Source of the DNA: Podarcis erhardii
Lineage: Eukaryota
NCBI GenBank assembly: GCA_964252035.1
Contig: OZ176205.1
DNA: 64,000 bases
Direction: 5' to 3' (one strand)
Both the position numbers and the translations under genes were made by a program. Of the stretch, positions 3,080-55,655 are shown in pieces. The notes under the pieces were generated by a model, which did not search any database, was not told where the DNA came from, and saw only the letters and a program-made list of their open reading frames with translations. Each line of letters begins with the position of its first letter. Position 1 is the stretch's first letter.

Positions 3080-14270
<11,191 letters not shown>

Positions 14271-20771: not shown

Positions 20772-20865
20772 ATGGCAGTTCCTCTGTGCTTGGTGAGGCC
20801 ACTGCTTGCCATACTCCTGCTCATCTCTTTGCCTCTGCTGAACTGTGTCTACATCACAGATGAAG
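20772..20865 (+). CDS. MPL: MPL exon 1 (signal peptide)
   Basis: MAVPLCLVRPLLAILLLISLPLLNCVYITDE, phase-1 donor GAAG|GTAAG matching exon 2 phase. Confidence 0.8.
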
Positions 20866-23800
20866 GTAAGATTACAAACTGCTACTACTGTCCATGGTCT
20901 AGGGCAGAGCTTTCCAAACTTTTCATATTGGCAACATACTTTTTAGACATTCGTCATTTCACAACACAGCCATTCAGTTTTACTAGCAAACCGGAGATTA
21001 AACTAGCCCCTTTCCTGCCCTGGGAGGAGCTTGGGGTACATTAGCAGAACACACCTACACGCTACAGCCGACACACTAATGTGTCACGACACAATTTGGA
21101 AAGCTCAGGTTTAGGGGAAAAGGTGAGGATGAAGCATGGCTTTTGTTACTTTTTTTGTGGCCCTAGAAACCTCATTAGGAAAGCCAGGCAGGTGAACATT
21201 CTTGTGGACGAAGGGCATCTGGGCAGAGGGGGTGGGATGGGGCTTTCTGGGAGCACCACAACAACCAGCTTTCCTGGATTAGGGTTTCCAATTTCTGATT
21301 AAAAATGCCCTCTAGGCTTTTGATCACTGTGGCATGCAGATGTTATCAGGCAAGGCTTCTCACAATGCAATGATGAAAGAAGACACTCATTTCAAACTAT
21401 TCTCTACCATGCCCTTATTAAAACATAACTCTGGACTGTACCATGTGGGATCAGGAAACTTTGGAATAAATGAAGCTCTTCCATACTCGTGGATCAAGCT
21501 CCACCTTAGCTGCTGCAGAAGGAGGGTTAGGAGAAAACCCTTTCATGTCCTATGCCAGGATGAGGCCCAGCACAGAGAACTATAGATCCCAGAACTATAA
21601 GTGCTGAAAATTGTAGCTCTGTTGAGATAAACTACAGTTCCTGGGATTCTTTGGGGAAAGTCCTGTGCTTAACATGTATGGTATATTCACAGCCTCAGAG
21701 ATCTACCTGCACACCTGTACGTTATTCAGGGCCACCAGTCAACAGAAGAGCAAGGAACATTGGTATGTGGAAAGATGGAACAGGTTACAAAGGCTCAAAG
21801 TGAATGTGGGTACCGAAAGCGCCAAATTGTTTCCTGTCCAGATCAATGCAGTTCTTTACTAGGATCAGCTATTAAGTGCAGTCTTTCCAGATGATGAGAA
21901 TTTTCCTCACCACAACTCTCAATTAGGGAGAAACAAGATCTAACTAGAATTCAGGTTTGTTTTTCCAGCACCCTTTATTCTTCACTGTCCTTTGTATAGA
22001 GTGGTTGTGTTTCCTCCCTTCTTCTGTGGGGCCACAAGGGTGGGGGGACAGGAACATAAAAAAGACACTGACCAAGAGTTCTGTCTATGTTCAAAACTTG
22101 AATAGCTCATAAGATCTTTTCAGCTTTTGCCGATGGATATGATACTGTTAGAAATACTACAAGGACAGAAACAAAAATCTAAAGAAATTCTTCTTTGACT
22201 TAGCGTGAATGATAAACCTTAAATTGTTTAAGGGTAAGATGTGAAATTATTGACTAAATATATATAGAACAGTGGTACCTCAGGTTACATACACTTCAGG
22301 TTACATATGCTTCAGGTTACATACGCTTCAGGTTACAGACTCTGCTAACCCAGAAATAGTGCTTCAGGTTAAGAACTTTGCTTCAGGATGAGAACAGAAA
22401 TCGTGCTCCGGCGGCGCAGCGGCAGCAGGAGGCCCCATTAGCTAAAGTGGTGCTTCAGGTTAAGAACAGTTTCAGGTTAAGAACGGACCTCCGGAACGAA
22501 TTAAGTACTTAACCTGAGGTACCACTGTATTCAGATTTCACAGATATCCTATGTTCTGCAGTGTTACTTCTCAAACCCTTAATTCTGATGGTATAATTCA
22601 TTTTACCTTCTTGCATTGTTTGTTCCTACAGAATTATTGATCCCCTTGATTTCTTTGTTTCCCTCTCAAATGTTTTAAAATTAGGGCTCCCTCCAGATGT
22701 CCTTTTTATTGTGCATTTGTCATTACCCATGATTCTGCCTGCAAAAGTGTCACGGTGAACCTATACTGCTTTGTTTCCAGTCAATGCATGTCCCATAGTC
22801 TCCTGCTTTCCTTTCTCACTGGGATTCTAGATACAATATTTACCCTTATAAGACACTCCTGAAACACTGTGGGAGGGAAAAGCAGCTAGTGAATTATTTT
22901 CGTGGGGATGGGTTAATGAACCCTGTTACTTCTCCACTCAAAATCTTAGCGTCTTGAGACTACTTTTTTTAAAGTCATTGTTTTCATTGCATTTGCGTAT
23001 AATGTGTAGTTTGTTCCCTTATCTTGCTTCCTCCCACTCTCACTGGGAGTTCTATCTCCCTGGGACAGGAAGCTGCTCCCCCCGCCCCAAGTTTGCCACA
23101 AAACCACATGGCTATTTTGGGATGTTTGTGAACACTTCCTGGCAGCAAATACTTTGGGGTGGTGGTAATCATTAGCTCCCCCTTTCCCTAATCCTTTCCC
23201 AACCCACTCAAACAACTGTGTTGCCAATATGGATGTTCACATAAAAAAACAGAAACAGAATGACAACATTTAGGGTCAGTACCGTTTGCATTTGTGGGTT
23301 ATGAAAATCAGTACTGTTAGATGGATGTGTGGTGTACAAAAATGAAAATACATTATAGAAGGGATGAGGAACCTATGGCCCTCCAGAGGTTGCTGGACTA
23401 CAACTCCCATCAGCCCTAAACATTGGCCATGCTGGCTGAACTAATGGGAGGTGGAGGTCCTCATTCTTGCATTATAGAGAAAATTAATACTGTTAGGGGG
23501 AGCATTTTAATGAGCCACTAAGCTTCACGGCAGAAGGGGGTCATAACAGGGCCAGTGACTGCAGGCTGCAACCACCCACCCACGCCAAGATGCAGGGCGG
23601 GGTCTTTGCCTGTTACCTGGTACGTACTTATTCAGAGAACTGCACCCAAACATTCAGGTTGGTGCCAAAGAATGAGAGCGTGGAGGTGCACTTTGAATAA
23701 CCACAGCCATCCCCCCACCTTTATTGAGCAACTTCTTGCACCTCACCCCACACCCACTTAATTCAAAATTAACCAACATTATTTGATCCCTTCATGTGGC

Positions 23801-25056
23801 TAACATTTATCTAGATCATCAGCCGTTCTCCTCAGCAGAAACTAGTTTGTCAGCTTCTAAGACTGTATGAACCCCCCACCCCTCACCCCATTTGCTCTGC
23901 AGTCATCATTATACTCCCACTGCTTGTTTGGGAAGTGGCAAAGCCCACATTATCCACAATCTGTATCTCTCTTGAGGTTTGTTATGAAATAAATACTGTG
24001 TTTTGGTGCATTTTCCCACACACCTGCTTTGAACCAAATTGAGAAAAAGAACCACCTAGTTGCATTTCAAGCCAGTGATGTGTACACAGCCTAACACACA
24101 TTTCTCTCCACTGCAGTGTGTCTTCTGGAAATTCTATCATGCATTTGATAAGGATATTTGATTTTATATCCCTTCCCTCCCCATTGTCATAGCTACCTCA
24201 TCCCTGTGTTGGCAAACAGGATCTCTACCCCGCCCCCCCTCCCAAGGCTAACTGTAGCATGGAGTGGGAAAAATTTTGTTGTAATCACTAAGGGGAGAAG
24301 GGTTAAATTTCACCACCACCACCCCAGCATGCTGTGTTCCCAATGAACATTGCTGCTTGGCACTTGCAATTTTTTAAAAAAACAATGTTAGAGAAACCAT
24401 TAGCATCATGTGTAGTTACAGGTAGGTAGTTGTGTTGGTCTGCCGTAGTCAAAACAATTTTTTTCAAAAAAAAATTCTTTCCAGTAGCACCTTAGAGACC
24501 AACTAAGTGTATCTGAAGAAGTGTGCATGCACACGAAAGCTCATACCAATAACAAACTTAGTTGGTCTCTAAGGTGCTACTGGAAAGGGGAAAAAATTAT
24601 TTTGTTTCATCGTGTGTAGTTAGGCTCCTAGAAACATAAGAAGTTTCATTAGAGTAGGCCAGACTATTGGTCTATCTGGCCTGGAACTGTCCAAAAGTGA
24701 AGAAGCATTTCACATCATGCACTACCTGATTTTCTTAGCACACTGAAGAAAGGCCCTACAGGAGTGGTGCCTTCTCCCCTTCTGAAACTTCCCCACCCCT
24801 AAAGACTTGAGCATGGCTATAAAACTCTTATTCCAAGCTGACTGGAGCCCTGGAGAGAAGCACAACCCGTGACAGGCTGTGGTGACTTACTGGCCATTTC
24901 TTACAGCTTGTGCTTGTACAAACACTTGTATTAATCTCTATGACCACAGTTCTATTTGCCATGCACTTGCTTCCTCTCATCTCACAGTCCAGATGACTTT
25001 GGGTATTTGTGGTTACAATTGTCGCCCTATTCAGCTTGAAGACTTATGCAAGCTTC

Positions 25057-25100
<44 letters not shown>

Positions 25101-28100
25101 TTTCTCTCCTCACACAGAGGCTGATCTATTGGCTGAAACAGCTCAGGACATCTTCTGCTTTTCTCGCACCTTTGAGGATCTCACTTGCTTTTGGGATGAA
25201 CCAGCACACGTGGATGGGGCATATCGGCGCTTCTTCTATACATACAAAGGGTGAGAGGTTTTTATACATGGCTATGATCCATAGTCCAGGCTGCCTGGAA
25301 GGTTTCCAGTAGAAGAATACTGCAGCTCCTTGAGGTTTCCCACTGCCCACTCTCTTCATCTCCACAGAGACAGAAGCCGAGAATGCACTCTGCGGTCAGC
25401 AAAGCACAGTGATGGAGGTTGGCGCCATGTCTGTATCTTCCCCAGGAACCATCAGGATATTCTGCTCTTTGCAGAACTCCACGTCGAGGTGTTAGACACC
25501 ATTAGTAATCACACCACTCGCTCTCAGGATCTCTCAGTGGCGTCTGTTGGTAAGCCTTCCTTCAGATTTGAGAAGCAAGGAAATGTGGCGTGACATTAAA
25601 AACAATTTTTAAACACTTAACAATCACAAAACGTGATGGCTCCTGAAAATATGTATCTCAGGTGTCATCCTTAGGACATGGTCCTAAATCCCACCCACCA
25701 CTGGCAGGGCTTGTTGAGTGGTACAGCCATCACTGCATCAGGATTCCACCACTCACATATACCATTAGCAAACTTCCTGTCTGCACACCAGTGGCGTAGC
25801 GTGGGGGGTGCAGGGGGGGCTGGCCACACCGGGCGCAACATCTGGGGGTTAGGGTTAGGGGGCGCAAATCCACGGGTTAGGGGGCGCAAATCCACGGGTT
25901 AGGGGGGGCAAATTACTTGCCTTGCCCCGGGTGCTGACAACCCACGCTACGCCACTGCTGCACACACATTTAGAGGGCAAAAGGGGGAGAGTCGAGTGAA
26001 GGGACACCTCTGCCTAATCCAGCCCCCAGCCTGGCAAACAACAACAACAACCCACTGTACTGAGGATGAGGCCATATGTATCTCCCTGGGAAGGAAGTTC
26101 AAAGGGGTGGGGCACTGGCACCTGCCAGCCAAACAACTCTTGCTGGTGGATCAGGGAGCAGAGCCTGCCCTAAGGATCTCACAGTAAAATCTGAGCATGA
26201 GGAGGAAAGCCAGAGGCAAAGGGAAGGGTGGACAAAGTGGAGGTCACATAAATAAGAAATGAAGTTACACCTACTTAAGCTTCACACTTGAGGATGTGAC
26301 ACCATCAAATTCTTGCAAACTTTCATTTCTACATTTGGCTCTGTCCATATGGCTGCCCTTTTCCTAGAGGCTAAGAAGTAGTGCATCCGGCCAGAATGCG
26401 GATGCCTAGATTGACATACCTGTCCCATACCACCAGTGCTTGCCCTTGCTAGCTGGAGAACTGCAGCCCACCTTTCTGCTGCTTTGTTGTTGCGTGCTGC
26501 AGTCCCAAGAAAGCAACCTTGCAGCAGACGCAGCCAAGTCCCCAGCATTCTTGCTTGCCTCTGCAGATTCCTGCACTCCCAGTTGTGACTACCACACAGA
26601 GAAGCATTCCACTGTAAATATACTGCATATACAGGAGAAATGTAACAAATCCACATATTATGTATTTATTAGAATACTACTTGGGGATTTACTGTTGCTT
26701 CAGAGATTGCAACAATGGTAATATTTACTGCACCACTTAAGTGTTGAAATTATATCTTCATCTGTCTTTGTTTGTAAATCCCATAGTTTTCTATCTACGT
26801 TTGTAAATCCCACAATTGTCTATCTATGCTTAGGTCTGATTGCTCCACCAATGAATGTAACAGTGGTGTGGCCTGGAGTGGCACGACAGTTGCACGTAGC
26901 CTGGACCCCCCCACCTTTCCACTATGCAGACTTCTTGGCCTATGAGGTTCTTTACAGTGCTGAAGGCTCCACAGAGCCACCATCCAGGGTATGGCTTATA
27001 TGGGGCAGGGGAGGTTGTGGTGTATGACACCTGCAGGGCAGATGGCTGTGTCTAAAACTCTAAGCAGGACACCAAGCTCTGTGGCTATCAAATAGGGGTG
27101 AAGGAGCAGTTCAATGCAGTTTGCATTTATAGGTGAGCCTACTTATTTTGCACATTCTGCAACACTACACGAACCTTTGAACTCTACAATTCTATGATCC
27201 TATGAAAACACAGACAACCTTCCAAATTCAGAATTCTCTGAATTTTGCAGTGCAGTTCTCCAGCCAAATAGTGTGTACAAAAACAAATATACTAGGATAA
27301 AATGTGCCTACAAATGCACATATTACTGAAAATAGCATACAAAAATGCATTAGATAAGGGAAAACACCTTTGCCAAAATGTGTGTATTATGCAAATGAAG
27401 CAGCGTAAAAGGGGAGAAATTTGCAGTAAAATGTTGCTAAATTTTCATGAGCACTTATTGTTAAACAATTTGCAAACAGATGAGCTATCGGGGGAAACTA
27501 CTTCCACTAATCCTTACATGTGCCTGATTCCATCCCTCATAGATGGAGGTGAAGAACAGCCATACATGCCGCCTCAGAGACCTGCTCCCTGGGCACTGCT
27601 ACCACATCCAAGTGCGCACCAAGCCTGATGGCCTCTCTCTGGATGGGCTCTGGGGACCATGGTCTCCAGTAGTATTAGCAGAGACACCCCATCTCCCTGG
27701 TAAGGGTCCTGTTGTTTGGTAAACAGTTGTCATGGGGATCTTAGTTGCATTACTTTCGAACAATGCACTATGACTGCATACATATTGTTACACGCCACCC
27801 CAATCTCCAAGCAGTGTGAGTTTCAAGTTGTTTCAGGTGCTTACCCGGGGTTTGGTTTCCTCAGAATGAGGGACATTGGAGACTGTAGTGTCTTTAGGAT
27901 ACATGGTTTAGTTATTCTTTCTATATAGCTCTGTTTCTCCATAATAACTTATTTGGACTAGTGCCTAGATGTAGAGGTGAAACGGAAGCGAGGGGGAGGT
28001 GAGGTTGAATCCTTGCAAGATGAAAGCACTGTGGGTGAGTGGTTCTCATGTTAATTGCCTACCCTGGATGGGGTTGCATTCCCCCTGGAGGAGCAAGTTC

Positions 28101-31100
28101 ACAGTCTGTGGGTTCTTCTCAATCTAGCTTTGTCATTGGGAGTCCAGGTAGCCCCAATGGCTAGAAGTGCCTTTTATCAGCTGCAATTGGAATGGCAGGT
28201 GTGACCATTCCTTGACTGGGAAAGCTTGGTAACAGTAGTTAATGTACTGGTTACTTCAAGACTGGAATTCCATATTGCACTCTATGTGGGGCCTCCCTTG
28301 TGCTTAATTCAGAAGCTACAGTTAGTACAGAGTGTTGTGGTACAATTGCTGGCAGGAAACTCTCCTCAGAGAGATCTGCACTGGTAGCCAATTTGCTGCC
28401 AGGCGATGTCCAAAGCGTTACTGTTAGTCTATAAAGCCCTTAGCAGCTTGGGATCAGTTTACTTGCAAGATTGCCATGCCCCATACATGCCCACTCAACC
28501 ACTTCGAGCTGCGGAAATGGCATTCTTACAGGAGTTACATACCATATTTTTCCATGTATAACACGCCCCCATGTATAAGACGCCCCCTATTTTGAGGGAC
28601 TCCAAATTAAGAAAATGGGGGAAGGTGGCAAAGAGTCGTTTAAAGCAAACAAGCGTCTGTCTGTCTGCTCGCCAACAGTAGCCAGCAATCGTACACCCAA
28701 TTGCCACGCAAAAGACAATCCAAAGCAACCTTTGCTGCAGCAACCAATCACATGCCCAATTGCCACAATGGCAGCCAACCCAAACAATTTAACTCAATTC
28801 CACAGGATGCAAGGGTGGTTTTAAAAGAGGATTAGGCAAATTAATGGTGGGTAAGTCTGTCAATGATGTCCACAGTTGGAGGCAACAATGCTTCTGAATA
28901 GCAGTGGCTGGAAACCACAGGCGGGGGGGAGGCCTCTGTGGCCCAGATCCTGCTTGTGGGTTCCCCACAGGCATCTGGTTGGCCACTATGGGAACAGGTT
29001 GCTGTGTTAGATGGACTACTGGGCTGATCCTGCAGACATTACCAGTTTTTATGTGGTAACACTAGGTAATATGAAATGCTTCCAAGAAGCACTTGTTAAA
29101 TCTTCAAAGCTTTATTGCTTTACAATAAAGAGCAAACACCAGAATATGCCAATCACAAAAAAGAAATGCTTATTAAACTATGAAAGGTAATATATGAAAT
29201 GAATCCAGGAGATGCTTGTTGAATTATGAAAGGTAATAAGCACCTGGACTAATTAAAACAGCATACGTCTCCCTTGCAAAATAAGAGGTGGAGAGCAATA
29301 GGAGTATCTAATTGAATCTTCACTGACTTCCTCAGAGGAAGGTAAATCTCACTGCTGTTGTAATCTGTATTTTGACCCAATAGTTTTTCATTAGATTTCT
29401 ATCCCACTCTTCCTCCCCAAGGAGATCTGGGCAGCTCCTTTTAAGAAATAGAACCCCATGAAAAGAAGTGTCCAGGCACCAGAATTCCTAGAGGCATATA
29501 TCTGAGCACCTGTTGCCATCAGGGTGGAACCTATGCCTTCCCCACCGTGTTTTTGCCATCTCTTTGTATTGTAAATAGTTGTTTCACCAATGCTGACATA
29601 AATTGATATGTGCAAAAAGCAGCAACCATTTATTTCCGTCAGGGAGGTGGTAGTGGCAGTAGTAGCTGATCTCTAGTAAGGCAAGGGGAGCTGAGGTGGC
29701 CTTGGTAGGAGCAGGGGCCTGAGGAAAGAGGAGCAGACTGAGAGGGAGGAAAAGGCCATCCATCTTGGGTGTGCCACAGTGGCCAGGTGAAGGCCAGGAT
29801 CTGTCTTTAATGTGAGGGTGCAGAGGATGTCCATGTGTTGTCTATGAAGGCAGGGTGGTGTGGAGGCAGAGGACTGGTTTGGGAAGAAATGGGTAGAGGC
29901 AGGAACCAGTAGCAAGCAAGCAAGCAAGCAAGCAAGATCTTCACTGTTGCAACAGAGTCCCCCACCCCTGTCCCGCTGCAGGAAGGTAAGGACCTAGAAC
30001 AAAAATGTATAACAGCTTTTAAAGGCTTTAGAAATTGCACAACCCCTTAGCCAAAGACCACCCAAAAGCATCATACAACCGTCACAGAAACAGGTGGTCT
30101 ACAACATAAATTTGAGAGTTTGGCTTGTCTCCTGTTTCTCAAGATACCAGATAATGTTTGCTGACTTGCATTATCTTTGCCAGTTGGGGCCATCTTGTGA
30201 AATAGTATGTACCCTAGTTTCTGAAACCATTGTCACAGACCTCTCCCCTATTCATAAACAAAGTGTGCTCTTTTGAGTGAATTTGAAGGATTTGTAAGTG
30301 AAAAGAACCATTGGGGAAGGTTTTTCCATGGTATTTCCTTCTGCAGAGAAATATTTGGGGTCTGAAATATCTCAGGTATGTGGTTTATGTACTTAAGTTT
30401 TATTTATGACACCTTAGAATTCTTATGACAATTCCACATTGTATTTAAAAGATGCTGTCTTACTCCTGATTCCTCTCACTCTCTGTTCTGCCAAGAGGAA
30501 ATTGGCCTGCAGTGCTTCACTCCTGACCTACGCCAATTGCGCTGCTGGTGGAAGTGGGAGACCACAGAACCTGGCCCCTCTCAAAGCATATTGTACTGGG
30601 CAGAAGAGAACAGCAGAAATTCAAGGTGACACAACAACACCCCGTCCCCAAATCCTGGGCTGTGCTGCCGTAGTTATGATTGCTGGTGTCCACTGTTCAT
30701 CCTCCAAAACACCCCTGCCTCCCCCTCAACTCTCACATGTCCACAATAGGCAAAGCTCTGAATCAGCATTGTCTATGAAGTCACCCAAGGCTGCCCCCAA
30801 ATATTCATATCATCTAGTCCAACCCCATACCAAGCAGGGAAATGAGGTGGGTCACTTTTGCCTATGTTGTCTTGCACATGTCCGGGGACTTTCTTTTTTA
30901 AAGATGGGTATGCAAGTACCTGTGTAAGAAGTAAAAAGGTACTGGAGGCAGGGGAGGAAGAATGATTGAGAGGAGAGACAAAAAAGAAATCCTGGGTATT
31001 TTTCATCAGGCTCTGCCCATTAATGCATACAGCAAGCACCAAAATAGCAATGAATCTATTGACTGGGAGGAAACTGGAGTGTGCGGGCATTTGTGAGCCA

Positions 31101-34100
31101 ACCATACATGCAAAAAGAAAAAATGAGCTTCAAATGACCTGTTTGCAAGATAATGCCTCTGTGTGGACATAGCTTCTGTTGATATAGCTGACTCCATCCT
31201 CACTCTTGGTTTCCAGAATGCAAACCTGGCAGAAGTGTGAGGGGAAAGAAGAGGAGATTAAGCCCCACTATGACCGCCATAACCAAACATGCACCTTCCA
31301 GCCTAGCAACACAAGTTATATCTCTGTCCTGGTGATTCTCAGCCAGGGACAGCAAGAAGTCAACTACTTGAAAGAGCCATTCCAACTGCACCATGTTGGT
31401 AAGAATCTCCAACATGTCTGGGCCACGGCACCATGGCTGCTGTCAGTCTGCATTTTGGGGGTAGCAAACTGTCCTGAAGAGCAGGAGCATCAGGCGGTGT
31501 ATAGTGCTGTTTGCACTGCATTGGGCCTCTGCCGCTTCTGCAAACTGAGCTGACTTGACCAGCCATCTCTCTCCCTCTGATTACAGTACTCACTGCTCCA
31601 CCAAGCATCCTGCAAGTCACTGTAGACAGAGGTGTGCTAAAGCTGGAGTGGGCACCACCACTGGAAGAATTAGCTGAACATATGGTGTATCAGATACAGT
31701 ATGCAGAACAAGACATCTCAAAATGGAAGGTAATATAAAAATGTATGAGGAATGCATGAGAGAGTATTAGGACCACACATCTATTGCATTAGATACCCTT
31801 TTTTCCCCTTTCAGTACTAGAGCACAACTGGAAACATAAGGGAAGTGCCTTTGATAAAAACACATAGCTTTTCCCAGGAAACACTCCCTGGCAACAGCTG
31901 AAAAAAGGAAAGGAAAGAAAGGCTAATCCAGTTGCAGGCTGCATTAATAGAGCCATAGTTTCCAAAATGAGAAGCAATAGCTCCACTTTATTTTGCACCA
32001 GGACCTCATCTGGATTACTGTGTGCAGTGCTGGGCTCCTCACTTTTAAGCTATAGACAAAATGTAATGAGTTCAGTGGAAGGCACTGAATCAGTGTCAAT
32101 AGCATGAATTATGCTCCACCCCCAGCCATCACCATTGGTCTAGGAGACAAGCACAAGCTGAAGGGATGTGTGTCATTGTTGGAATGTTCAGTCACCAAAC
32201 TGATCTCTGTTTATACATGTCCTGAGGCATGTGAGACCACAGAAAAGAGCTAAGACTATAAAACAGCTTTTATAGAACATGTTATTTTTGCAGCTCAGAT
32301 AGAGTGGCTATGGGGTTCTGACCCAGTTCTTCTGAAGTAGCCAATTATATATCAAGGAGCTCACCTGATCCTGCCTCACCCAACAGGGCCCAAACTTCCA
32401 TCTTCCAGTCTATGGTGCCCCTAGTCTTTCACTCAGTTCCTCCAGACTGTTCAGTGTTTTGGGGTGAGATGCAATCACATACTGGCAAAATCAAGTTGCA
32501 CAGTTCAAGTGAATTTGGTGTGCTGGAAAGGGTGGGCTAACAGTTGTTTGATACAGTGTCATCTGACCTCTCTGCAAACAAATTGGGATGAATATTCAAT
32601 AAATAGCTAATATCATCTAACCTCCATGTAAATCACTGATCTTCAACTGGTAGGTCAGGACCCTGCGGTTCAGCCTTTCTCAATGTTCTCAAAGATGTTG
32701 AACTACAATTCCTATGATTCCTAGCCAGTGTGGCCAATGGTCAAGGATGAGGGGAGTTGTAGTTCAAGAACATCTGAGGACTCAAGGTTGAGAAAGGCTG
32801 CTTTAGTTGACAATGGACTGATCTAAGGTGGGTCACAACAAGAGCACTCCCACCATGCAAATATATGGCAAAAGATTAAGAAATGGGTTCTCAAATGCAT
32901 TTTGGGGTTAAAAGTGGATCCTGAGTCTGATAAGGTTGAAGATACTTGCTGTAAACAATTCAGAGAGAATGCTAAATAAACAGGTTGTCTGGAAGCAACC
33001 CAGGTCAATTATCTTTTATAATTCCACTGCTCCATTTTGTCATTAAAAAGCCTTTGATCAACATGCCAGGCTTTTCCAAAGAGGTTTGTGAACTTTCTGA
33101 TACAATTGCCCTCAATCCTTGTAGAGCTGTCTTCTGGCAGCAGGATTTCTGGCAAGTTCATGATAAAACCAAAAGATGCTGCTTTTTTTTTTTTTTTTTT
33201 TTTGCACTAGTTGCAATTTGTGGACCATCTTCAAGGGCAGTGTCACATCCCATACTGCCATATCTGGATTATGAATTCAAGGCAATCAGCCAGATGGGAA
33301 AAGTTTAAACAAAGGGACTTAAAGATGCTACATCCTCCAGTTTTTCAACACAAACAAAGCCTTTCACAAAGTGGGGGAGTGAGTGTGAGAAAGAGACCCA
33401 TGTTAGAAGTTTCTACTGGGATCAGATGAGTGATGCTTGAGGACCAGCAAATACAGAGCAAAAGCAGTCTCACAGCTCTGACCCAGATAGCACAACTGCT
33501 CTAGGTTCTGGATGTGAATCTAACCAGCTAAGCACACCTAATGGGGCTATTCTCTGGACAGACTCTGCAGGTGCAGTACTCAAACAGCAGTGAAATTCAT
33601 CTGGCAGCCGGGGGCCACTGCTGCCTTCAGCTTCGTGCTCAGCCAGATGGACAGAAGTTCCAAGGGAACTGGAGTGTGTGGTCAGAACATGTGTGCACTG
33701 ATGTCCCACCTGATTCAGGTAAGAGACCACAAATAGAAATGTAGGGTTGGATACAGGCAGTGTTTTTTTCTAAAAAGAAATGTTTAGGGGTACTCTCATT
33801 TTCCTACTCATATTGAAATACTGCCCCTCAAAGAGGCCAAACTTAAATTCACAAAACGTTTAGGGTTATGCGTACCTCTGCATCCCCTGAGGCCCAAATG
33901 GGCATTTAGAAAAGAGCTGACATAGTGTGGTAACACAGCTTCACCCTTTGTATCTTCCCTAGGTTCAACCATCTTAAATGTGACACCTGCTCTGTTGCTC
34001 TGTGCAGGGCTTGTATTGGGGCTGGGCTGCATCTTCCTGTCCATTCACAGGTAAATTTACATCATCTAGCATTCACCTTCAATACTTAGTTTTATTTTGG

Positions 34101-36283
34101 GAGCTAGTTGCAAATTGGAGAAACTGTTATGGACACCATGCACAGACAATAATCACAACCATGCACATGAATGTATAGTAAACACACACACTCCCACCTT
34201 TACCAGCAATTAGGCTTGGGAAAAAACATTTTTGCTCCCCTGCCTCCCACATCAGAGATATCTTCCTAGAGTGCAGCTGGAAAGGAAGTTTGTACACATG
34301 CATCCAGGAAGTTCACTCACATACACATATCCTGCAACAATTAGGTTTGAGCAAAGTCTCCTATTGGAGCCAAGAGAGGACTTTTTTCATTCCTATTTGC
34401 AAAATGTCCCTCCCCTGATGCAATTAGGCATGAAAAAAGCCCTCTATTAGCTCTAGTCTAGTAGTAGACTTTGTTCAAACCTAATTGCAGAGGAGGTTCT
34501 ACTGGGGGAGGAGGTTTAAAGCTGGGGAGAATTATCTCCCCTTCCCAGCTATCACCCTCAATGAAAGCTCATCTCACCCCACCGGTGGTGCCATGATTAG
34601 GCTACTATTAGCTACAATAGTAGGGTTCTTTCAAATTGCTCAGGGTTGGGGTGGGCTGGGGTTGATGTAAGACCAGGGGTAGGAAACCTAAGGCCTGGGG
34701 GCCGGATGTGGCCCAATCACCTTCTCAATCCGGCCCACGGATGGTCTGGGAATCAACATGCTTTTATGAGTAGAATGTGTGCTTTTATTTAAAATGCATC
34801 TCTGGGTTATTTTTGGGACCTGCCTGGTGTTTTTACATGAGTAGAATGTGTGCTTTTATTTAAAATGTGTCTCTGGGTTATTTGTGGGGCATAGGAATTC
34901 GTTCATTACCCCCCCCCCCAATATAATCCAGCCCACCACATGGTCTGAGGGACAGTGGACCAGCCCACAGCTGAAAAAGGTTGCTGACCCCTGTGTAAGA
35001 CCAAAACAAAAAACCACACTTTGGGATGGGGCTGTGATAGAGGCAGATTTGCTTCTATTGAAATCAGCTGGGTTCCCTGAATTTCACATGCTCATTGTTC
35101 CTTGTTAAGCAGTCTGAAACAAAAGCTCTGGCCGCCCATCCCAGACCTTCACCACGTCCTGGATGGATTCCTTGAGGACAATGGAAAGCACCAGGTGAGG
35201 CCTTCCTCTTCCATACAGGCACCAGGACAGGAGACCAGAGTAATCATTTTTAAAGGTGGTGAACAGTATGGCTGCCTTACTGTCTTCCAGTTCTGTTTTG
35301 ATGGGAGCCTGCTTCAAGTTTGCAAGGCTTCATGACTGACATGAAAACATCAGGCATAAGTTTCATAACTCTAATTAGTCTTTTCCTTGATGCAGATTTA
35401 TAAATCCTGAATTGTGATTTGTAAATGTTGTCATAGTGGAAGTTTAAGAGACAGCATACTTTGTCTGAAGCAGCATTAAGAGTCATTTTAACGTGGCGAG
35501 TCAGAATACACCAAAATAGGGTATCTAACAGTGACAAAGAGGGCTATAAATACAGAACCATGATCTCTCTGCCTTATTTCTTATAGTTTCCAGCAGAATT
35601 GCATTAATTCCCATAACAAAATCTCATGCTGATGTTGCTTCTGTCAGCTATCCTCTCCCCAGGGAGATTTTCTGTCTGAAGTTGGGATGGCAAATATGTG
35701 CCCCCAGGTATTTTGTAATAGGAGTGTTAACATGTACACAGAGATAAGTATGCATGTACACATTTACCTCCACACTGTAGATTGGAGAGGGTGAAGCCCA
35801 GGGACATTTTTGTGTTTCTGATGCTGCTTCCTTCCCATCTTCCAGGTGAATGCTTTCTTCTGCAACAAAACTTTAGAGGACACACCTTTGACTTGCCTGC
35901 TGGAAGTCCTGTCTGAGATACCCCTGGAAACACGTAGCAGTAGCCCTCTCCTAGATAGCACTCAGCTGCACCAGACAGAGGGGGACACCCAGGCTTCTTC
36001 ACACTTGTACTACATGGTGCCAAGTCCTAGCAATCCCCAAGGGAATAATAATGAAAATGAGTATTTTGGTGCCACTGATGATGGACATGACACGCTCTCA
36101 CTGCCCTTGGAACATGATCTACACATAACTTCGGAACTGAAGGTCCAGCTAAGTATCTTCACCTTGTTCAGCACACCACTTTTGGCTCCTGACACAAAAG
36201 AGGAAAGAAGATGGGAAACTTCTGGGGATGAGTCTGTGTCTGCCACACACATATCAAACCAGTCTTACCTGCTCGTGGGCTGA
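20772..36283 (+). CDS. MPL: Thrombopoietin receptor (c-Mpl), 12 coding exons, 647 aa
   Basis: Exons 20772-20865, 25118-25250, 25368-25549, 26834-26988, 27543-27699, 30496-30625, 31217-31398, 31587-31729, 33562-33718, 33963-34050, 35110-35194, 35846-36283 sum to 1944 bp with consistent phases. Signal peptide, CFSRTFEDLTCFWDE, WGPWS and WSVWS motifs, TM helix, Box1 LWPPIPDL, Box2 LLEVLSE, C-terminal THISNQSY; syntenic position between TIE1 and CDC20. Confidence 0.93.
22270..22527. mobile_element. Tigger-like MITE
   Basis: TIRs CAGTGGTACCTCAGGTT / AACCTGAGGTACCACTG, TA on the right flank, internal 16-mer triplication. Confidence 0.8.
24421..24590. mobile_element. Penelope-like element remnant with inverted terminal duplication
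   Basis: Perfect 32-bp inverted repeat 24477-24508 / 24556-24587 enclosing the hammerhead motif; sequence resembles reptile PLE pseudo-LTRs (from memory). Confidence 0.6.
24509..24546 (+). ncRNA. Minimal type I hammerhead ribozyme motif (Penelope-like element derived)
   Basis: GTAT-CTGAAGA-A-GTGTGC-AT-GCACAC-GAA-AGCT-C-ATAC: stem I GTAT/ATAC, core CUGANGA and GAAA, stem II GTGTGC/GCACAC, palindromic AGCU stem III, cleavage triplet CUC. Confidence 0.75.
25056..25103 (+). repeat. (TTTC)n microsatellite forming the MPL exon 2 polypyrimidine tract
   Basis: Direct reading. Confidence 0.95.
25118..25250 (+). CDS. MPL: MPL exon 2
   Basis: EADLLAETAQDIFCFSRTFEDLTCFWDEPAHVDGAYRRFFYTYKG, 133 bp. Confidence 0.95.
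25368..25549 (+). CDS. MPL: MPL exon 3
   Basis: DRSRECTLRSAKHSDGGWRHVCIFPRNHQDILLFAELHVEVLDTISNHTTRSQDLSVASV|GTAAG, 182 bp. Confidence 0.9.
25789..25957. mobile_element. hAT MITE containing TTAGGG repeats
   Basis: Perfect 17-bp TIR CAGTGGCGTAGCGTGGG, perfect 8-bp TSD CTGCACAC (25781-25788, 25958-25965). Confidence 0.9.
26834..26988 (+). CDS. MPL: MPL exon 4
   Basis: GLIAPPMNVTVVWPGVARQLHVAWTPPPFHYADFLAYEVLYSAEGSTEPPSR|GTATG, 155 bp. Confidence 0.87.
27543..27699 (+). CDS. MPL: MPL exon 5 (WGPWS motif)
   Basis: MEVKNSHTCRLRDLLPGHCYHIQVRTKPDGLSLDGLWGPWSPVVLAETPHLP|GTAAG, 157 bp. Confidence 0.92.
28040..28530 (+). mobile_element. L2 LINE ORF2 fragment (degraded)
   Basis: ALYVGPPLCLIQKLQLVQ and LLVYKAL-like peptides interrupted by stops/frameshifts. 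Confidence 0.65.
28540..28625. mobile_element. Tc2-like left-end fragment
   Basis: TACCATATTTTTCCATGTATAACACGCCCCCATGTATAAGACGCCCC, similar to the ends of the elements at 1023 and 53234. Confidence 0.45.
28760..29035 (+). mobile_element. CR1 LINE 3' end
   Basis: TTTTAAAAGAGGATTAGGCAAAT and GGCATCTGGTTGGCCACT..GATGGACTACTGGGCTGATCC. Confidence 0.55.
30496..30625 (+). CDS. MPL: MPL exon 6
   Basis: EEIGLQCFTPDLRQLRCWWKWETTEPGPSQSILYWAEENSRNS, 130 bp. Confidence 0.9.
31217..31398 (+). CDS. MPL: MPL exon 7
   Basis: MQTWQKCEGKEEEIKPHYDRHNQTCTFQPSNTSYISVLVILSQGQQEVNYLKEPFQLHHV|GTAAG, 182 bp. Confidence 0.88.
31587..31729 (+). CDS. MPL: MPL exon 8
   Basis: VLTAPPSILQVTVDRGVLKLEWAPPLEELAEHMVYQIQYAEQDISKWK|GTAAT, 143 bp. 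Confidence 0.92.
31995..32100 (+). mobile_element. CR1 RT fragment
   Basis: RPHLDYCVQCWAPHF-like peptide. Confidence 0.5.
32671..32800. mobile_element. Short palindromic MITE
   Basis: 13-bp TIR CAGCCTTTCTCAA / TTGAGAAAGGCTG with internal inverted GAACTACAA/TTGTAGTTC; related fragments near 23360-23460 and 41318-41440. Confidence 0.65.
33562..33718 (+). CDS. MPL: MPL exon 9 (WSVWS motif)
   Basis: TLQVQYSNSSEIHLAAGGHCCLQLRAQPDGQKFQGNWSVWSEHVCTDVPPDS|GTAAG; an alternative in-frame acceptor exists 9 nt downstream (33571). Confidence 0.9.
33963..34050 (+). CDS. MPL: MPL exon 10 (transmembrane helix)
   Basis: CTTCCCTAG|GSTILNVTPALLLCAGLVLGLGCIFLSIH|GTAAAT, 88 bp; phases 1/2 fit both neighbours. 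Confidence 0.85.
34674..34993. mobile_element. hAT (Charlie-like) MITE
   Basis: CAGGGGT...ACCCCTG TIRs, perfect 8-bp TSD TGTAAGAC, internal ~50-bp direct duplication. Confidence 0.88.
35110..35194 (+). CDS. MPL: MPL exon 11 (Box1)
   Basis: SLKQKLWPPIPDLHHVLDGFLEDNGKHQ|GTGAG, 85 bp. Confidence 0.93.
35846..36283 (+). CDS. MPL: MPL exon 12 (Box2 and tail)
   Basis: VNAFFCNKTLEDTPLTCLLEVLSE...THISNQSYLLVG*, 438 bp. Confidence 0.9.
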   Translation: MNAFFCNKTLEDTPLTCLLEVLSEIPLETRSSSPLLDSTQLHQTEGDTQASSHLYYMVPSPSNPQGNNNENEYFGATDDGHDTLSLPLEHDLHITSELKVQLSIFTLFSTPLLAPDTKEERRWETSGDESVSATHISNQSYLLVG

Positions 36284-51896: not shown

Positions 51897-51962
<66 letters not shown>

Positions 51963-53909
51963 TACATGCCTTCCCTAAATCTCACCTGGGCCAAATTTGG
52001 CACCCCACCACCAGCTCCAGGGAAGCACTGAATGGTGGAACACATGCAGGAAGGTCACCTGTTCATTCTTCTTTCTTAGGATGAAGATCACCTGGAAGCA
52101 CGAGATTAGAGTGAGATTGGCTTTTCATTTTGGCCAGTGGGCCATTACTCCAGAATGTATAAAAGAGAGGAAGCACCATTGCAGACTCCAAATAGTAACA
52201 ATCCAATCATCTTCAGTGAGCTAATAAATATCAACTGTACATACTGTAAGAAAATGAACAAAAACCACCCTATCCCAATGAAATACCTACTAGTGTTAGT
52301 AGAATATAAACGTTAGTCACCATTAATTTGCACAAATGATCCATGTCAGAATAAGTAGGGCTGTCTGACCACATCTGGTAAGTGTTGTTAAGGCCAATAC
52401 AAATGTGTAGCCATACCCATTTCTGCTCCAAACAAGATACTGTAGGCCTCAAAAAACAAGCACTTACTGTGTCAAGCAGTTCAATGTACTTGGAGATGAT
52501 GAAGACCCAGGCTACATGGACCATCTAACAAGAAAGAGCAATGTCAGAAATCCTAGTCATCAAAACATAAAGCTCCACCCTACTTTTCTACCCTCATTTT
52601 TTCTTCCTTCTGAATCCCCATTTCTCCTCTTGAAGTAATCCCACCACAGAATTGCAACATTTGCCAAGCTTGTGCCTACATTAAAAAAAAAACAAGAACA
52701 CTCTCACACATGGGGGAATGTGAGATAAGATATGGGGTTGAAAGAATGAAAGAACTTACCCGAAGGGCCATGGGATTCTGGGATTGGTCCACAGGGTCAC
52801 ACCTCCAAGTGTAACCAGTCAACCAGCCTGACATAAGGAACTGCAACAAGGAGCCACCATTCAGATACTTCTCAATGATACTACATTCACCAGCTCAGCT
52901 TTGTAAACATACCCACAAAAATTACAAGCCTAAAATTTGTGTTACTAGTTTTATAAGAGGCTAATCAGCTACGTTTCCATGCTCACTGAAGAGAAAGAGA
53001 AGCTTCTTCTCTATGGTCAACATTAAAATGCAGGCAACTATCCTATTAGCAGGAAAATTAAAATAAAATAAATAAAAGTAACTTGCTATCAAACAGGCTG
53101 GAGGACAGACAAAGCTGAGGGACAAGCTTTCCTTCCTTAGCAGCCACCAGCAGTCCATTCATTCATCTGCATAGAACTCTTAGGTCACCAATGGCTACCA
53201 AGCTAGTGCCGAAATGGAAGGTTGTACAAGGTACCGTATTTTTCGCTCTATAACACGCACCTGACCATAACACGCACATCGTTTTTAGAGGAGGAAAACA
53301 AGGGAAAAAACATTCTGAATGAAACAGTGGATGTATCATTTTTGTGCTTCATGCTGTGGCCACAGACATGTGATCTGATGGTGAATTTGGGGTGACCCAA
53401 TGCAAAAATCCTGAGAATCCCTGTGCATCCATGGTTTGTAACCAGGTTTTTGCACCATTGCAGCCCCAGGCAACAGTGGGTGTGTGATATTTGGGGGGCA
53501 GGCTGTAGCCATGGACATGCTATGTGATCTGATGGTGAATTTGGGCTGACCCAATGCAAAGATCCTGAGGATCCATGTGGATCCATGCTTTTTAACCACG
53601 TTTTTGCACCATTGCAGCCCCAGGCAACAGTGGGTGCATGATTTTTAGGGGGCAGGCTGTAGCCATGGACATGCTATGTGATCTGATGGTGAATTTGGGG
53701 TGACCCAATGCAAAGATCCTGAGGATCCATGTGGATCCATGATTTTTAACCACATTTTAAGTGGGGAGGGAAGGAAAAACACAGAACGGACAAGGAGCAC
53801 GAGAGGGGTGTGCAGAGAAGCAGCTGGCTAAGAATGCAGGAGAGGGGTATAACGGGAGGGAGGAAAGGAAGGCAAAAGTTTTCCTTCACCTACCCACCCA
53901 AGCCAGCCA

Positions 53910-53981
<72 letters not shown>

Positions 53982-55655
53982 CCCCCCCCCCCCCCCGCAT
54001 GTTTTCAGCAGACGACACTCTGCTTTACCCTCTGCTTGCCTGGAGGGGAGGGGCTTTCCCTGCTCTTTGTTCTGTTTGAGCAAACACAGCAAGGAAACAG
54101 AGATGGGTGGGCAGTAAGACCCTGAGGCAGAATGCAGGAAAGCAGCCGCTTCCTCTTTTAAGGTTTCCCTTCTCCGAGACGCGAGATTTGATTTTTTTTG
54201 CCTCCCCTCACGCCATTTGGCTCCAGGGACCACACATTCGCTCAATAGCACGCACAGACATTTCCCCTTCCTTTTTAGGAGAAAAAAATCTGCGTGTTAT
54301 AGAAGGAGCCTGTTGCAGCCACCATGCTCAACAATTAGGTGGATGGGGTGCTAGCTCTGCTTCTTCAAATAATCCCCACCTGGTTAGGTGGTGTTGTAAA
54401 TAACTAACTCTGATGTAATTCTGCATACTAACTTATATATACACACACTTTATCTCCCCATATTTATAGTTTTAAAAATCAGCTTATGTATGTAGTTTTG
54501 TCCAGCAATGGCTTTGTACATCCAGCTGCTACAATGCAAGTCCAATAGACTTAATTTGTAACTTAACACTTTTAAAGAAGAGGCACTTCTTAAGATAATT
54601 CTCCTATTGACCTGAGCAGGTAATGCTACCCCTGCCAGCTTTAAGAAAATGGAATACCAGTAAGCATGATGCACTCCATCACATAAACACTGACAGAGAA
54701 AATATATTTACTGGGAAGGGGTTGTGCAATTCCCAAGTCACATGTATGTACCATTCTGTATAAAAGGCTACAATGGAGACACTAGACAACTGTTGCACGA
54801 TTATGGCCAGCTGATATATTTAAGTAAATTACAGCTAGTAGAAACTTGTACATTGTCTGTTAAGCATAGCCTTGCTACACTTCTAGGTCATCATGTGAAA
54901 GAGTTTATTCATGGAAATTAGCATCCTCATAAAAAAACCACACCCTGCATGAACATTAACACCTTAATGTAACCAGACCAAAGGCCCATTGCACAAATGG
55001 TTTCCGTTATCAGGATCCATTAGGTGCATCCCACCCCAAAACCTCTTAACCCCATAAAGCTTTACATATGCCAGGGTAGGAAGGAGTTTGAAACAGACAC
55101 TGGGGATGCACCACAAGCAGTAACGGCCACATCCCACCAATGGCTGCTAGAGCTAATCTATCTAGGAGATGCTTACCTCATAGACTATGTAGAGCGACAG
55201 TGCTACCATGGAGGAGTTATAGACAATCATGAACTTCCTGAGGTTCAGAGGTTTCCGGTTGGCCATGATGCGTGGCCCCAATGACAGTACAAAGTAGATA
55301 TAACCCAGCAAGATGCCCGTCATAGGAAAAGGTGAGCCCATAAGTGGATACGCAGAAATCCGTGGGTCTGAAGGGAAAAGTGAACTGTTCAGAGGTATGC
55401 ACTGTGCCCAACAACACTCCCTCTGTTATTTTATCAGCAGCCCTATGCATCTAGGGCAGGATAAGTTAAGTGTTTGAGTCACACCGGGACCCTCAAGCTT
55501 TTGTTACACCTGGGGCAGGGGAGGTAGCATCTGTAAGGCAGCCAGAAAGTTGACTACTTCTCTTCTTGAGGCCCCAGTGGGTCACTTTGGCTGAGTAAGC
55601 CAAACTCACCTGCTTTCTTTATGAAGTCTTGATACACGTTCACCAGTGAGTCCAT
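50750..55655 (-). CDS. ELOVL1: Very-long-chain fatty acid elongase 1, 7 coding exons, 287 aa
   Basis: Minus-strand exons 55655-55610, 55367-55177, 52840-52760, 52524-52468, 52091-51986, 51409-51273, 50995-50750 (864 bp). HXXHH motif (LHVFHH), KYLWWKK, C-terminal ER-retrieval KAKAN*; tail-to-tail with CDC20 as for ELOVL1 in other vertebrates. Confidence 0.95.
51273..51409 (-). CDS. ELOVL1: ELOVL1 exon 7
   Basis: [46 protein letters not shown], 137 bp. Confidence 0.96.
51897..51957. repeat. (AC)n(AG)n compound microsatellite, 29 bp from the ELOVL1 exon 6 donor
   Basis: Direct reading. Confidence 0.95.
51986..52091 (-). CDS. ELOVL1: ELOVL1 exon 6 (HXXHH)
   Basis: [35 protein letters not shown], 106 bp. 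Confidence 0.96.
52468..52524 (-). CDS. ELOVL1: ELOVL1 exon 5
   Basis: [19 protein letters not shown], 57 bp. Confidence 0.95.
52760..52840 (-). CDS. ELOVL1: ELOVL1 exon 4
   Basis: [27 protein letters not shown], 81 bp. Confidence 0.95.
53369..53760. repeat. 154-bp tandem repeat (~2.6 units) inside the Tc2-like element
   Basis: TGTGATCTGATGGTGAATTTGGG starts at 53369, 53523 and 53677. Confidence 0.9.
53914..53996. repeat. (CT)n plus poly-C tract
   Basis: Direct reading. Confidence 0.95.
55177..55367 (-). CDS. ELOVL1: ELOVL1 exon 3
   Basis: [51 protein letters not shown]...YIVYE, 191 bp. Confidence 0.95.
55610..55655 (-). CDS. ELOVL1: ELOVL1 exon 2 (coding part)
   Basis: [25 protein letters not shown], donor GTGAGT; acceptor at 55677-55678. 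Confidence 0.92.

What the first reader, a model, noticed from the sequence alone, without database searches (positions are those of the whole stretch)
24477..24587. Hammerhead ribozyme in MPL intron 1, displayed in the loop of a perfect 32-bp stem
Seen: on the MPL sense strand, 24509-24546 reads GUAU-CUGAAGA-A-GUGUGC-AU-GCACAC-GAA-AGCU-C-AUAC. That gives 4-bp stem I, intact CUGANGA/GAAA core, one extra A after A9, 6-bp stem II, a loop-less palindromic AGCU stem III and a CUC site with predicted cleavage after C24542. It fills the 47-nt loop between perfect inverted arms 24477-24508 and 24556-24587. Established: Penelope-like elements carry minimal type I hammerheads whose palindromic stem III needs dimerisation, and their insertions often have inverted terminal duplications. 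Inference: a single intact copy transcribed in an MPL pre-mRNA, with a long closing helix not part of the usual minimal motif; it could cleave via trans-dimers with other PLE transcripts or between nascent RNAs, affecting intron 1 processing or releasing a structured RNA. The class is known; this helix-capped intronic arrangement is not something I recognise as described.
Basis: partly seen in the sequence, partly recalled or inferred. Interest (0 to 1): 0.8.

Follow-up and report, generated by a model that had tools for sequence, protein, structure and literature searches.

The report
Penelope retrotransposon fold-back with hammerhead motif
The hammerhead ribozyme motif in the first intron of the thrombopoietin-receptor gene is real, but it is the standard minimal ribozyme of a short, head-to-head Penelope-like retrotransposon insertion whose inverted arms are a known by-product of how these elements insert, so it is an ordinary transposon copy.

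Summary
The arms 24477-24508 and 24556-24587 are 32 nt and 100% complementary. A complete minimal type I hammerhead lies at 24509-24546 on the + strand, with its predicted cut after C24542. It sits in MPL intron 1 (20866-25117), sense to the gene.

The hairpin lies inside a 189-bp insertion (24419-24607) flanked by a 15-bp target-site duplication. The insertion has three parts: a 99-nt direct 5'-truncated copy carrying the hammerhead, an adjacent inverted 5'-truncated copy, and a tail of about 31-37 nt on the inverted copy only. This is the published anatomy of Penelope-like element (PLE) insertions. It also fits in vitro work on an Anolis PLE, where both DNA strands are cut and extended and reverse transcription starts at two sites.

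The motif has every published hallmark of PLE minimal hammerheads, including a helix III that cannot form in one molecule. Single motifs of this kind showed no detectable self-cleavage in vitro.

No second copy lies in the window. No evidence of host function was found.

The scan has noted this kind of object many times in this genome: 113 notes mention hammerhead and Penelope, 21 of them palindromes. One followed-up case was judged an ordinary relic. Interest is low.

The parts
24404..24418 (.). Left target-site duplication, CATCATGTGTAGTTA
   Evidence: Direct repeat D2, 14/15 identical to 24608-24622, immediately flanking the insertion (read)
24419..24449 (-). PLE 'tail': an AC-rich extension (on the element's sense strand) present only on the inverted copy. 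About 31 nt by alignment; 37 nt by the difference in distance from the ATG
   Evidence: The reverse complement of the left arm extends past the point where the direct copy ends (alignment). It occurs once in the window. It matches the 30-40-bp one-sided tail of PLE insertions (PMC8557442; PMC11167929)
24450..24508 (-). Inverted 5'-truncated copy of the element's 3' region: an A/T-rich stretch at 24450-24476 plus the perfect arm 24477-24508
   Evidence: Outside the perfect 32 nt the two copies differ by a 10-nt indel and a few substitutions in A/T runs
24509..24546 (+). Minimal type I hammerhead motif. Helix I 24509-24512/24543-24546; CUGAAGA 24513-24519; extra A 24520; helix II 24521-24534; GAA 24535-24537; AGCU 24538-24541; C17 = 24542
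24509..24607 (+). Direct 5'-truncated copy of the element (element sense = window + strand), ending at the right TSD
   Evidence: An ATG in loop II (24527) opens a frame that stays open to the end of both copies, as in the Anolis PLE whose ORF starts in helix II
24556..24587 (+). Right arm of the perfect 32-bp inverted repeat
24608..24622 (.). Right target-site duplication, CATCGTGTGTAGTTA
20772..20865 (+). MPL exon 1 coding part (signal peptide), followed by the donor GTAAGA
25118..25250 (+). MPL exon 2 (acceptor AG at 25116-25117)

Best explanation
This is one severely 5'-truncated insertion (189 bp, 24419-24607) of a Penelope-like retroelement family of this lizard genome, landed in MPL intron 1. 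Shown: a 15-bp TSD; a direct 99-nt copy of the element's pLTR/ORF-start region carrying the family's minimal hammerhead; a head-to-head inverted copy of the last part of the same region; and a tail on the inverted copy only. Inferred: the element's endonuclease made a staggered break. Reverse transcription of PLE RNA was primed from both DNA ends, one starting at the proximal and one at the distal of the two known start sites. The two cDNAs were then joined at 24508/24509. On this view the 32-bp stem is a by-product of insertion, and the hammerhead sits in the loop only because one cDNA reached past it and the other did not. The motif is intact because the insertion is young (arms 32/32, TSD 14/15), not because the host selects for it. 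In MPL pre-mRNA the region should fold as a very stable hairpin. The hammerhead lacks a helix III within one molecule, so it should be essentially inactive and have no dedicated host function.
For: TSD and inverted arms. The arm alignment shows the tail on one side only. From ATG24527 the direct copy runs 81 nt and the inverted copy 118-119 nt. In the Anolis PLE, RT starts 111-118 bp into the ORF, the tail of 30-40 bp lies between the two start sites, and both DNA strands are cleaved and extended (PMC11167929). An inverted 5'-truncated copy next to the element and a one-sided tail are described as typical of PLEs (PMC8557442). [quoted passage not shown] The published Anolis Poseidon_Ac hammerhead passes the same descriptor with the same architecture. 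The hairpin is very stable: -79.2 kcal/mol, z = -10.5. A single min-HHR showed no detectable cleavage, and the Anolis PLE hammerhead is protein-dependent.
Against: No family consensus or second copy was available, so the family assignment rests on architecture and not on homology. There is no other copy in the window, two metagenome scans were blank, and the sequence differs from Poseidon_Ac. No Rfam hammerhead model matches. Just outside the perfect 32 bp, the two arms differ by a 10-nt indel plus substitutions. This is unexpected if both cDNAs copied one RNA faithfully; slippage in the A/T runs or two different templates are assumed, not shown. Absence of activity or host function is inferred from other PLE hammerheads and was not measured.
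Confidence: 0.88

Rival explanations
1. Functional intronic ribozyme: the hairpin-clamped hammerhead cleaves MPL intron 1, through trans-dimers with other PLE transcripts or with help from PLE protein. This would modulate MPL pre-mRNA processing or release a structured RNA.
For: The core is intact and on the sense strand in intron 1. The long stem continues helix I and would hold it closed. The genome carries many potential partners (unchecked scan notes). A PLE protein can switch on such a hammerhead in vitro.
Against: Helix III is only a 4-nt palindrome that must pair between two molecules. A single min-HHR showed no detectable cleavage, and dimers were weak and active mostly at non-physiological Mg2+. 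No RNA-seq ends were found at the Anolis PLE cut site. This is a young single-copy TE insertion, so its intactness needs no selection. After a cut the 36 bp of helix would keep the two halves together. From my own knowledge, engineered intronic hammerheads need not block splicing (exon tethering, Dye, Gromak and Proudfoot 2006).
Confidence: 0.03
2. The relevant feature is the double-stranded hairpin, not the ribozyme. The perfect 32-bp stem in the pre-mRNA would be a substrate for ADAR editing or Drosha/Dicer processing, that is, a TE-derived small-RNA precursor.
For: Very stable hairpin (-79.2 kcal/mol, z = -10.5). Below-threshold matches to several hairpin miRNA models, for example mir-559 at 47 bits against a gathering score of 95.
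Against: These Rfam matches are far below gathering score, occur on both strands and only reflect a long perfect stem. The apical loop is 47 nt. There are no small-RNA, editing or conservation data. It is a by-product shared with many other insertions.
Confidence: 0.06
3. A non-autonomous, retrozyme-like or MITE-like element whose consensus itself is a fold-back with the hammerhead in the loop, propagating as a unit.
For: Non-LTR retrozymes are reported to derive from PLE pLTRs and occur in reptiles (bioRxiv 10.64898/2026.07.22.740005). The unit is TSD-flanked and compact.
Against: There is only one hammerhead and no tandem repeat. The tail is on one arm only and the arm ends are unequal, which fits two independent cDNAs. 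Unchecked scan notes list fold-backs of many different lengths in this genome: 92, 98, 101, 188 and about 300 bp.
Confidence: 0.03

Closest known systems
Minimal hammerheads (min-HHR) of metazoan Penelope-like elements (Cervera and de la Pena 2014, PMC4209133)
   Same: [quoted passage not shown]
   Different: Nothing structural. This exact sequence was not found in the searchable literature.
Hammerhead of Poseidon_Ac (PAc) from Anolis carolinensis, tested in vitro (PMC11167929)
   Same: Same architecture under one descriptor: bulge after A9, 6-bp helix II, palindromic 4-nt helix III, C17, helix I of 3-4 bp. The element's start codon lies inside helix II/loop II. The 3' ends of insertions lie about 80-120 nt downstream, with a 30-40-nt tail.
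   Different: Different primary sequence (helix III ACGU against AGCU; a 9-nt loop II against a 14-nt palindrome), so it is another PLE family. Here the ATG is in loop II, not at the start of helix II.
PLE insertion anatomy: 5' truncation, adjacent inverted 5'-truncated copy, one-sided tail (Craig et al. 2021, PMC8557442; Evgen'ev and Arkhipova 2005 as cited there)
   Same: All three features plus a TSD are present.
   Different: The copy is extremely short (189 bp). The inversion junction therefore falls just upstream of the hammerhead and places it in the hairpin loop.
Non-LTR retrozymes and newt/axolotl tandem hammerhead repeats (PMC7229834; bioRxiv 10.64898/2026.07.22.740005)
   Same: Type I hammerheads that work as dimers, related to PLE pLTRs.
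   Different: Those are tandem direct repeats with a hammerhead in each unit and yield circular RNAs. Here there is a single hammerhead in an inverted duplication.
[quoted passage not shown]
   Same: A hammerhead in an intron, sense to the host gene.
   Different: Those are complete monomeric ribozymes conserved at orthologous sites and are covered by Rfam models. This one has no helix III within one molecule, no Rfam match and is a recent TE insertion.

Membership tests
Hammerhead ribozyme, minimal PLE type (min-HHR) | Conserved core C3-U4-G5-A6-N7-G8-A9 and G12-A13-A14 | tested here: met
   CUGAAGA at 24513-24519 and GAA at 24535-24537
Hammerhead ribozyme, minimal PLE type (min-HHR) | A15.1-U16.1 and a cleavage-site nucleotide H17 that is not G | tested here: met
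   A24538, U24541, C24542
Hammerhead ribozyme, minimal PLE type (min-HHR) | [quoted passage not shown] | tested here: met
   A24520 is the extra nucleotide. G24521-C24534 opens 6 complementary positions; 5 bp plus a CAUG loop form in the predicted fold. Hallmarks as listed in PMC4209133
Hammerhead ribozyme, minimal PLE type (min-HHR) | Helix I formed by the flanks (type I topology) | tested here: met
   GUAU 24509-24512 pairs with AUAC 24543-24546. It is present in the minimum-energy fold and stacked on the 32-bp stem
Hammerhead ribozyme, minimal PLE type (min-HHR) | Loop-less palindromic helix III (positions 15.2-16.2) that needs a dimer | tested here: met
   AGCU at 24538-24541
Hammerhead ribozyme, minimal PLE type (min-HHR) | Match to a curated hammerhead covariance model (Rfam) | tested here: not met
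   No hammerhead family matched at gathering score or at E up to 10. My inference, not tested: the Rfam models expect a helix III hairpin, which min-HHRs lack
Hammerhead ribozyme, minimal PLE type (min-HHR) | Site-specific self-cleavage | not testable with these tools
   Needs in vitro transcription or RNA-end mapping. Published relatives are inactive as single motifs or protein-dependent
Penelope-like element insertion | Target-site duplication flanking the insertion | tested here: met
   15 bp, 14/15 identical, 24404-24418 and 24608-24622
Penelope-like element insertion | 5' truncation with an adjacent inverted 5'-truncated copy | tested here: met
   Direct copy 24509-24607 and inverted copy 24419-24508, as described in PMC8557442
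Penelope-like element insertion | A 30-40-bp tail at one end only | tested here: met
   About 31-37 nt (24419-24449) on the inverted copy only (literature)
Penelope-like element insertion | Sequence homology to a curated PLE consensus, or linkage to an RT/GIY-YIG ORF | tested here: inconclusive
   The only consensus at hand, Poseidon_Ac, has a different sequence. The copy is too short to hold an RT. Repbase and Dfam are not available here
Non-LTR retrozyme | Two or more hammerheads in tandem direct repeats delimiting a unit | tested here: not met
   A single hammerhead and no direct repeat of the element in the window
Conserved amniote intronic hammerheads (HH9/HH10) | Rfam HH9/HH10 model match and conservation at the orthologous site | tested here: not met
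   No model match. Orthologous-site conservation is not testable here

The most novel reading that the evidence does not exclude
The fold-back pre-organises the minimal hammerhead: helix I is clamped by a 32-bp stem with a 9-nt bulge facing loop II. In cells where the PLE protein or other PLE transcripts are present, the motif would then cut MPL intron 1, tying retroelement activity to thrombopoietin-receptor expression.
Probability: 0.03. Interest if true: 0.55.

Novelty: already known. Interest (0 to 1): 0.1.

Why it matters
It matters little as a discovery. Minimal hammerheads in Penelope-like elements, their need for dimers or protein, and the inverted, tailed structure of their insertions are all published. 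The copy is a clean natural example: TSD, two arms ending about 37 nt apart, and a tail on one arm only. It illustrates in a genome the two-start-site, both-strands priming seen in vitro for an Anolis PLE. For the scan the practical value is a rule: hammerhead-in-hairpin or palindrome hits in this genome should be read as PLE insertion by-products unless they are conserved or show cleavage ends.

Tried and rejected
- Rfam at gathering score on the whole window, and at E up to 10 on 701 nt and on 66 nt around the motif, gave no hammerhead family. It gave only sub-threshold hairpin-miRNA matches to the perfect stem, on both strands. I rejected these as evidence for a miRNA.
- A search for further copies in the window found none. 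The searches covered the hammerhead, the arm and the tail with up to 3 mismatches, plus blastn with 7-nt words. No family alignment, covariation test or core-versus-flank decay test could therefore be made.
- Two metagenome scans, one anchored on the arm and one on the hammerhead, were blank.
- A full-text search for the motif sequence found no paper.
- Lunse et al. 2017 (PMC5785218) is not held in the library. It is cited only through the review that lists it.
- The double-hammerhead dimer could not be scored with nearest-neighbour energies because the intermolecular helix III crosses helix I. RNAcofold instead prefers a duplex through the 14-nt helix II palindrome (-32.6 kcal/mol), which cannot form helix III.
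- A second, relaxed-descriptor hit at 7103-7150 (- strand) was judged chance. It has 3-bp helices, no G10.1-C11.1 and an impossible helix III; 0.063 such hits are expected per window.

Full report
**Observation**

- The arms 24477-24508 and 24556-24587 are 32 nt, 100% complementary, and 47 nt apart.
- On the + strand, 24509-24546 reads GUAU / CUGAAGA / A / GUGUGC-AU-GCACAC / GAA / AGCU / C | AUAC. This gives a 4-bp helix I, both conserved core boxes, one extra A after A9, and a helix II closed by G10.1-C11.1. Helix III is a loop-less palindrome, and the CUC site places the cut after C24542.
- The predicted folds of the motif alone and of the whole insertion keep helix I and helix II (5 bp plus a CAUG loop) at the tip of the long hairpin. 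The whole insertion folds at -79.2 kcal/mol, z = -10.5.
- A strict descriptor of my own finds this one site in the window and none in 300 dinucleotide-preserving shuffles. The descriptor requires the core boxes, G10.1-C11.1, helices of at least 4 bp, a palindromic helix III and H17 not G. The motif is therefore not a chance match.
- No Rfam hammerhead model matches, at gathering score or at E up to 10. The only local Rfam matches are far-sub-threshold hairpin-miRNA models that match the perfect stem on both strands.

**Gene context**

- TIE1-like kinase exons lie on the + strand at about 8.3-11.8 kb.
- A cytokine receptor with two WSXWS-type exons follows on the + strand. The exon at 27543-27719 matches the thrombopoietin receptor structure 8g04 at E 3e-11.
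- A 648-aa homologue, P0002, maps by tblastn to 12 collinear + strand blocks from 25117 to 36280.
- Exon 1 is 20772-20865. It has an ATG, a signal peptide 17/31 identical to P0002, and then a GTAAGA donor.
- Exon 2 is 25118-25250, after the acceptor AG at 25116-25117, in a compatible phase.
- Intron 1 is therefore 20866-25117. The motif lies in it, sense to MPL, 510 nt upstream of the acceptor.

**What the object is**

The hairpin is not free-standing. A 15-bp direct repeat brackets a 189-bp insertion, 24419-24607: CATCATGTGTAGTTA at 24404-24418 and CATCGTGTGTAGTTA at 24608-24622. Inside it:
- **Direct copy.** The + strand from 24509 to 24607 is a 5'-truncated copy of an element, carrying the hammerhead.
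- **Inverted copy.** 24419-24508 is an inverted copy of the last part of the same sequence.
- **Arm alignment.** Aligning the reverse complement of the left part with the right part shows the perfect 32 nt first. An A/T-rich stretch follows, differing by a 10-nt indel and a few substitutions. An AC-rich extension of about 31 nt then exists only on the inverted copy.
- **Distance from the ATG.** Measured from the ATG in loop II (24527), the direct copy ends after 81 nt and the inverted copy after 118-119 nt. The reading frame stays open to the end in both.

**Comparison with the literature**

- Craig et al. 2021 describe PLE insertions as highly 5'-truncated, often with an inverted 5'-truncated copy adjacent at the 5' end. 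They also describe a 30-40-bp tail, often at one end only (PMC8557442).
- The 2024 in vitro study of the Anolis carolinensis element Poseidon_Ac (PMC11167929) reports the following:
  - The protein cleaves and extends both DNA strands.
  - Reverse transcription starts at two sites in an AC-rich stem-loop 111-118 bp into the ORF.
  - The tail is the sequence between the two start sites.
  - The ORF begins inside hammerhead helix II.
  - The hammerhead cleaves only when the PLE protein is present.
  - Hammerhead mutants do not affect insertion.
  - No RNA-seq reads end at the cut site.
- The copy in MPL intron 1 reproduces this anatomy almost number for number. One cDNA starts at the proximal site and one at the distal site. 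They are primed from the two sides of a staggered break and joined head to head at 24508/24509. That joining step is my inference.
- The Poseidon_Ac hammerhead, read from the published consensus, passes my descriptor with the same architecture: bulge after A9, 6-bp helix II, helix III ACGU, C17 and a 3-bp helix I. Its primary sequence differs and it is absent from the window. The present copy therefore belongs to another PLE family.
[quoted passage not shown] They note such motifs in reptiles (PMC4209133). All the hallmarks are present here.

**Likely behaviour**

- In MPL pre-mRNA the region should form the long hairpin, with helix I stacked on the 32-bp stem and a 9-nt bulge (24547-24555) on the 3' side.
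- Helix III cannot form within one molecule. A single min-HHR gave no detectable cleavage. Dimers or trimers gave low cleavage, and a single motif given an engineered helix III cleaved mostly at non-physiological Mg2+.
- The insertion is young: the arms are 32/32 identical and the TSD is 14/15. Its intact core therefore needs no selection to explain it.
- I conclude that the ribozyme is a passenger of a neutral intronic TE insertion (confidence about 0.88).

**Rival explanations**

- A host-relevant self-cleaving intron element: about 0.03.
- A double-stranded RNA or small-RNA precursor role for the stem: about 0.06 that it is processed at all.
- A propagating fold-back unit: about 0.03.

**Limits**

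- I had no second copy and no repeat library. The window holds none and two metagenome scans were blank. The family assignment is therefore by architecture.
- The difference between the arms in the A/T-rich stretch is unexplained. RT slippage or two template RNAs are guesses.

**Earlier notes of this scan**

- In this genome, 113 notes mention hammerhead and Penelope, and 21 of those mention palindromes.
- They include TSD-flanked fold-backs of several lengths in other introns.
- One follow-up (s1-229637) reached the same verdict for another copy.
- I used these only as leads. They agree with what I tested here.

**Verdict**

The kind is already known and interest is low.

Noticed in passing
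window 24419-24427 (+): The outer end of the PLE tail reads CAG|GTAGGT on the MPL sense strand, a good match to a 5' splice-site consensus inside intron 1. No upstream acceptor was examined.
   Followed up: no
window 24450-24476 vs 24588-24607: Just outside the perfect 32-bp arms, the two copies differ by a 10-nt indel and a few substitutions in A/T runs. This is odd next to 32/32 identity. It suggests RT slippage or two different template RNAs rather than later mutation.
   Followed up: partly
window 24527-24607 (+) and 24419-24507 (-): An ATG in hammerhead loop II opens a frame that stays open for 27 codons in the direct copy and 39 codons in the tail-bearing copy. This parallels the Anolis PLE, whose ORF starts in helix II. 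Being open by chance alone has a probability of about 0.15.
   Followed up: partly
window 25055-25105 (+): A (CTTT)n microsatellite forms the pyrimidine tract directly upstream of the MPL exon 2 acceptor.
   Followed up: no
window 7103-7150 (-): A weak hammerhead-like match to the relaxed descriptor only: 3-bp helices, U-A instead of G10.1-C11.1, and a 1-nt helix III loop. It lies antisense in the TIE1 region. 0.063 such hits are expected per window, so it is probably chance.
   Followed up: partly
window 8337-8636 and 11587-11763 (+): Tyrosine-kinase exons (HRDLAARN and DFG motifs) upstream of MPL on the same strand. By position they are presumably TIE1, as in the mammalian TIE1-MPL neighbourhood; that neighbourhood is from my own knowledge.
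   Followed up: no
window about 51900-52030 and 53900-54020 (+): Dinucleotide microsatellites, seen as RERERE and SLSLSL runs in the ORF translations.
   Followed up: no
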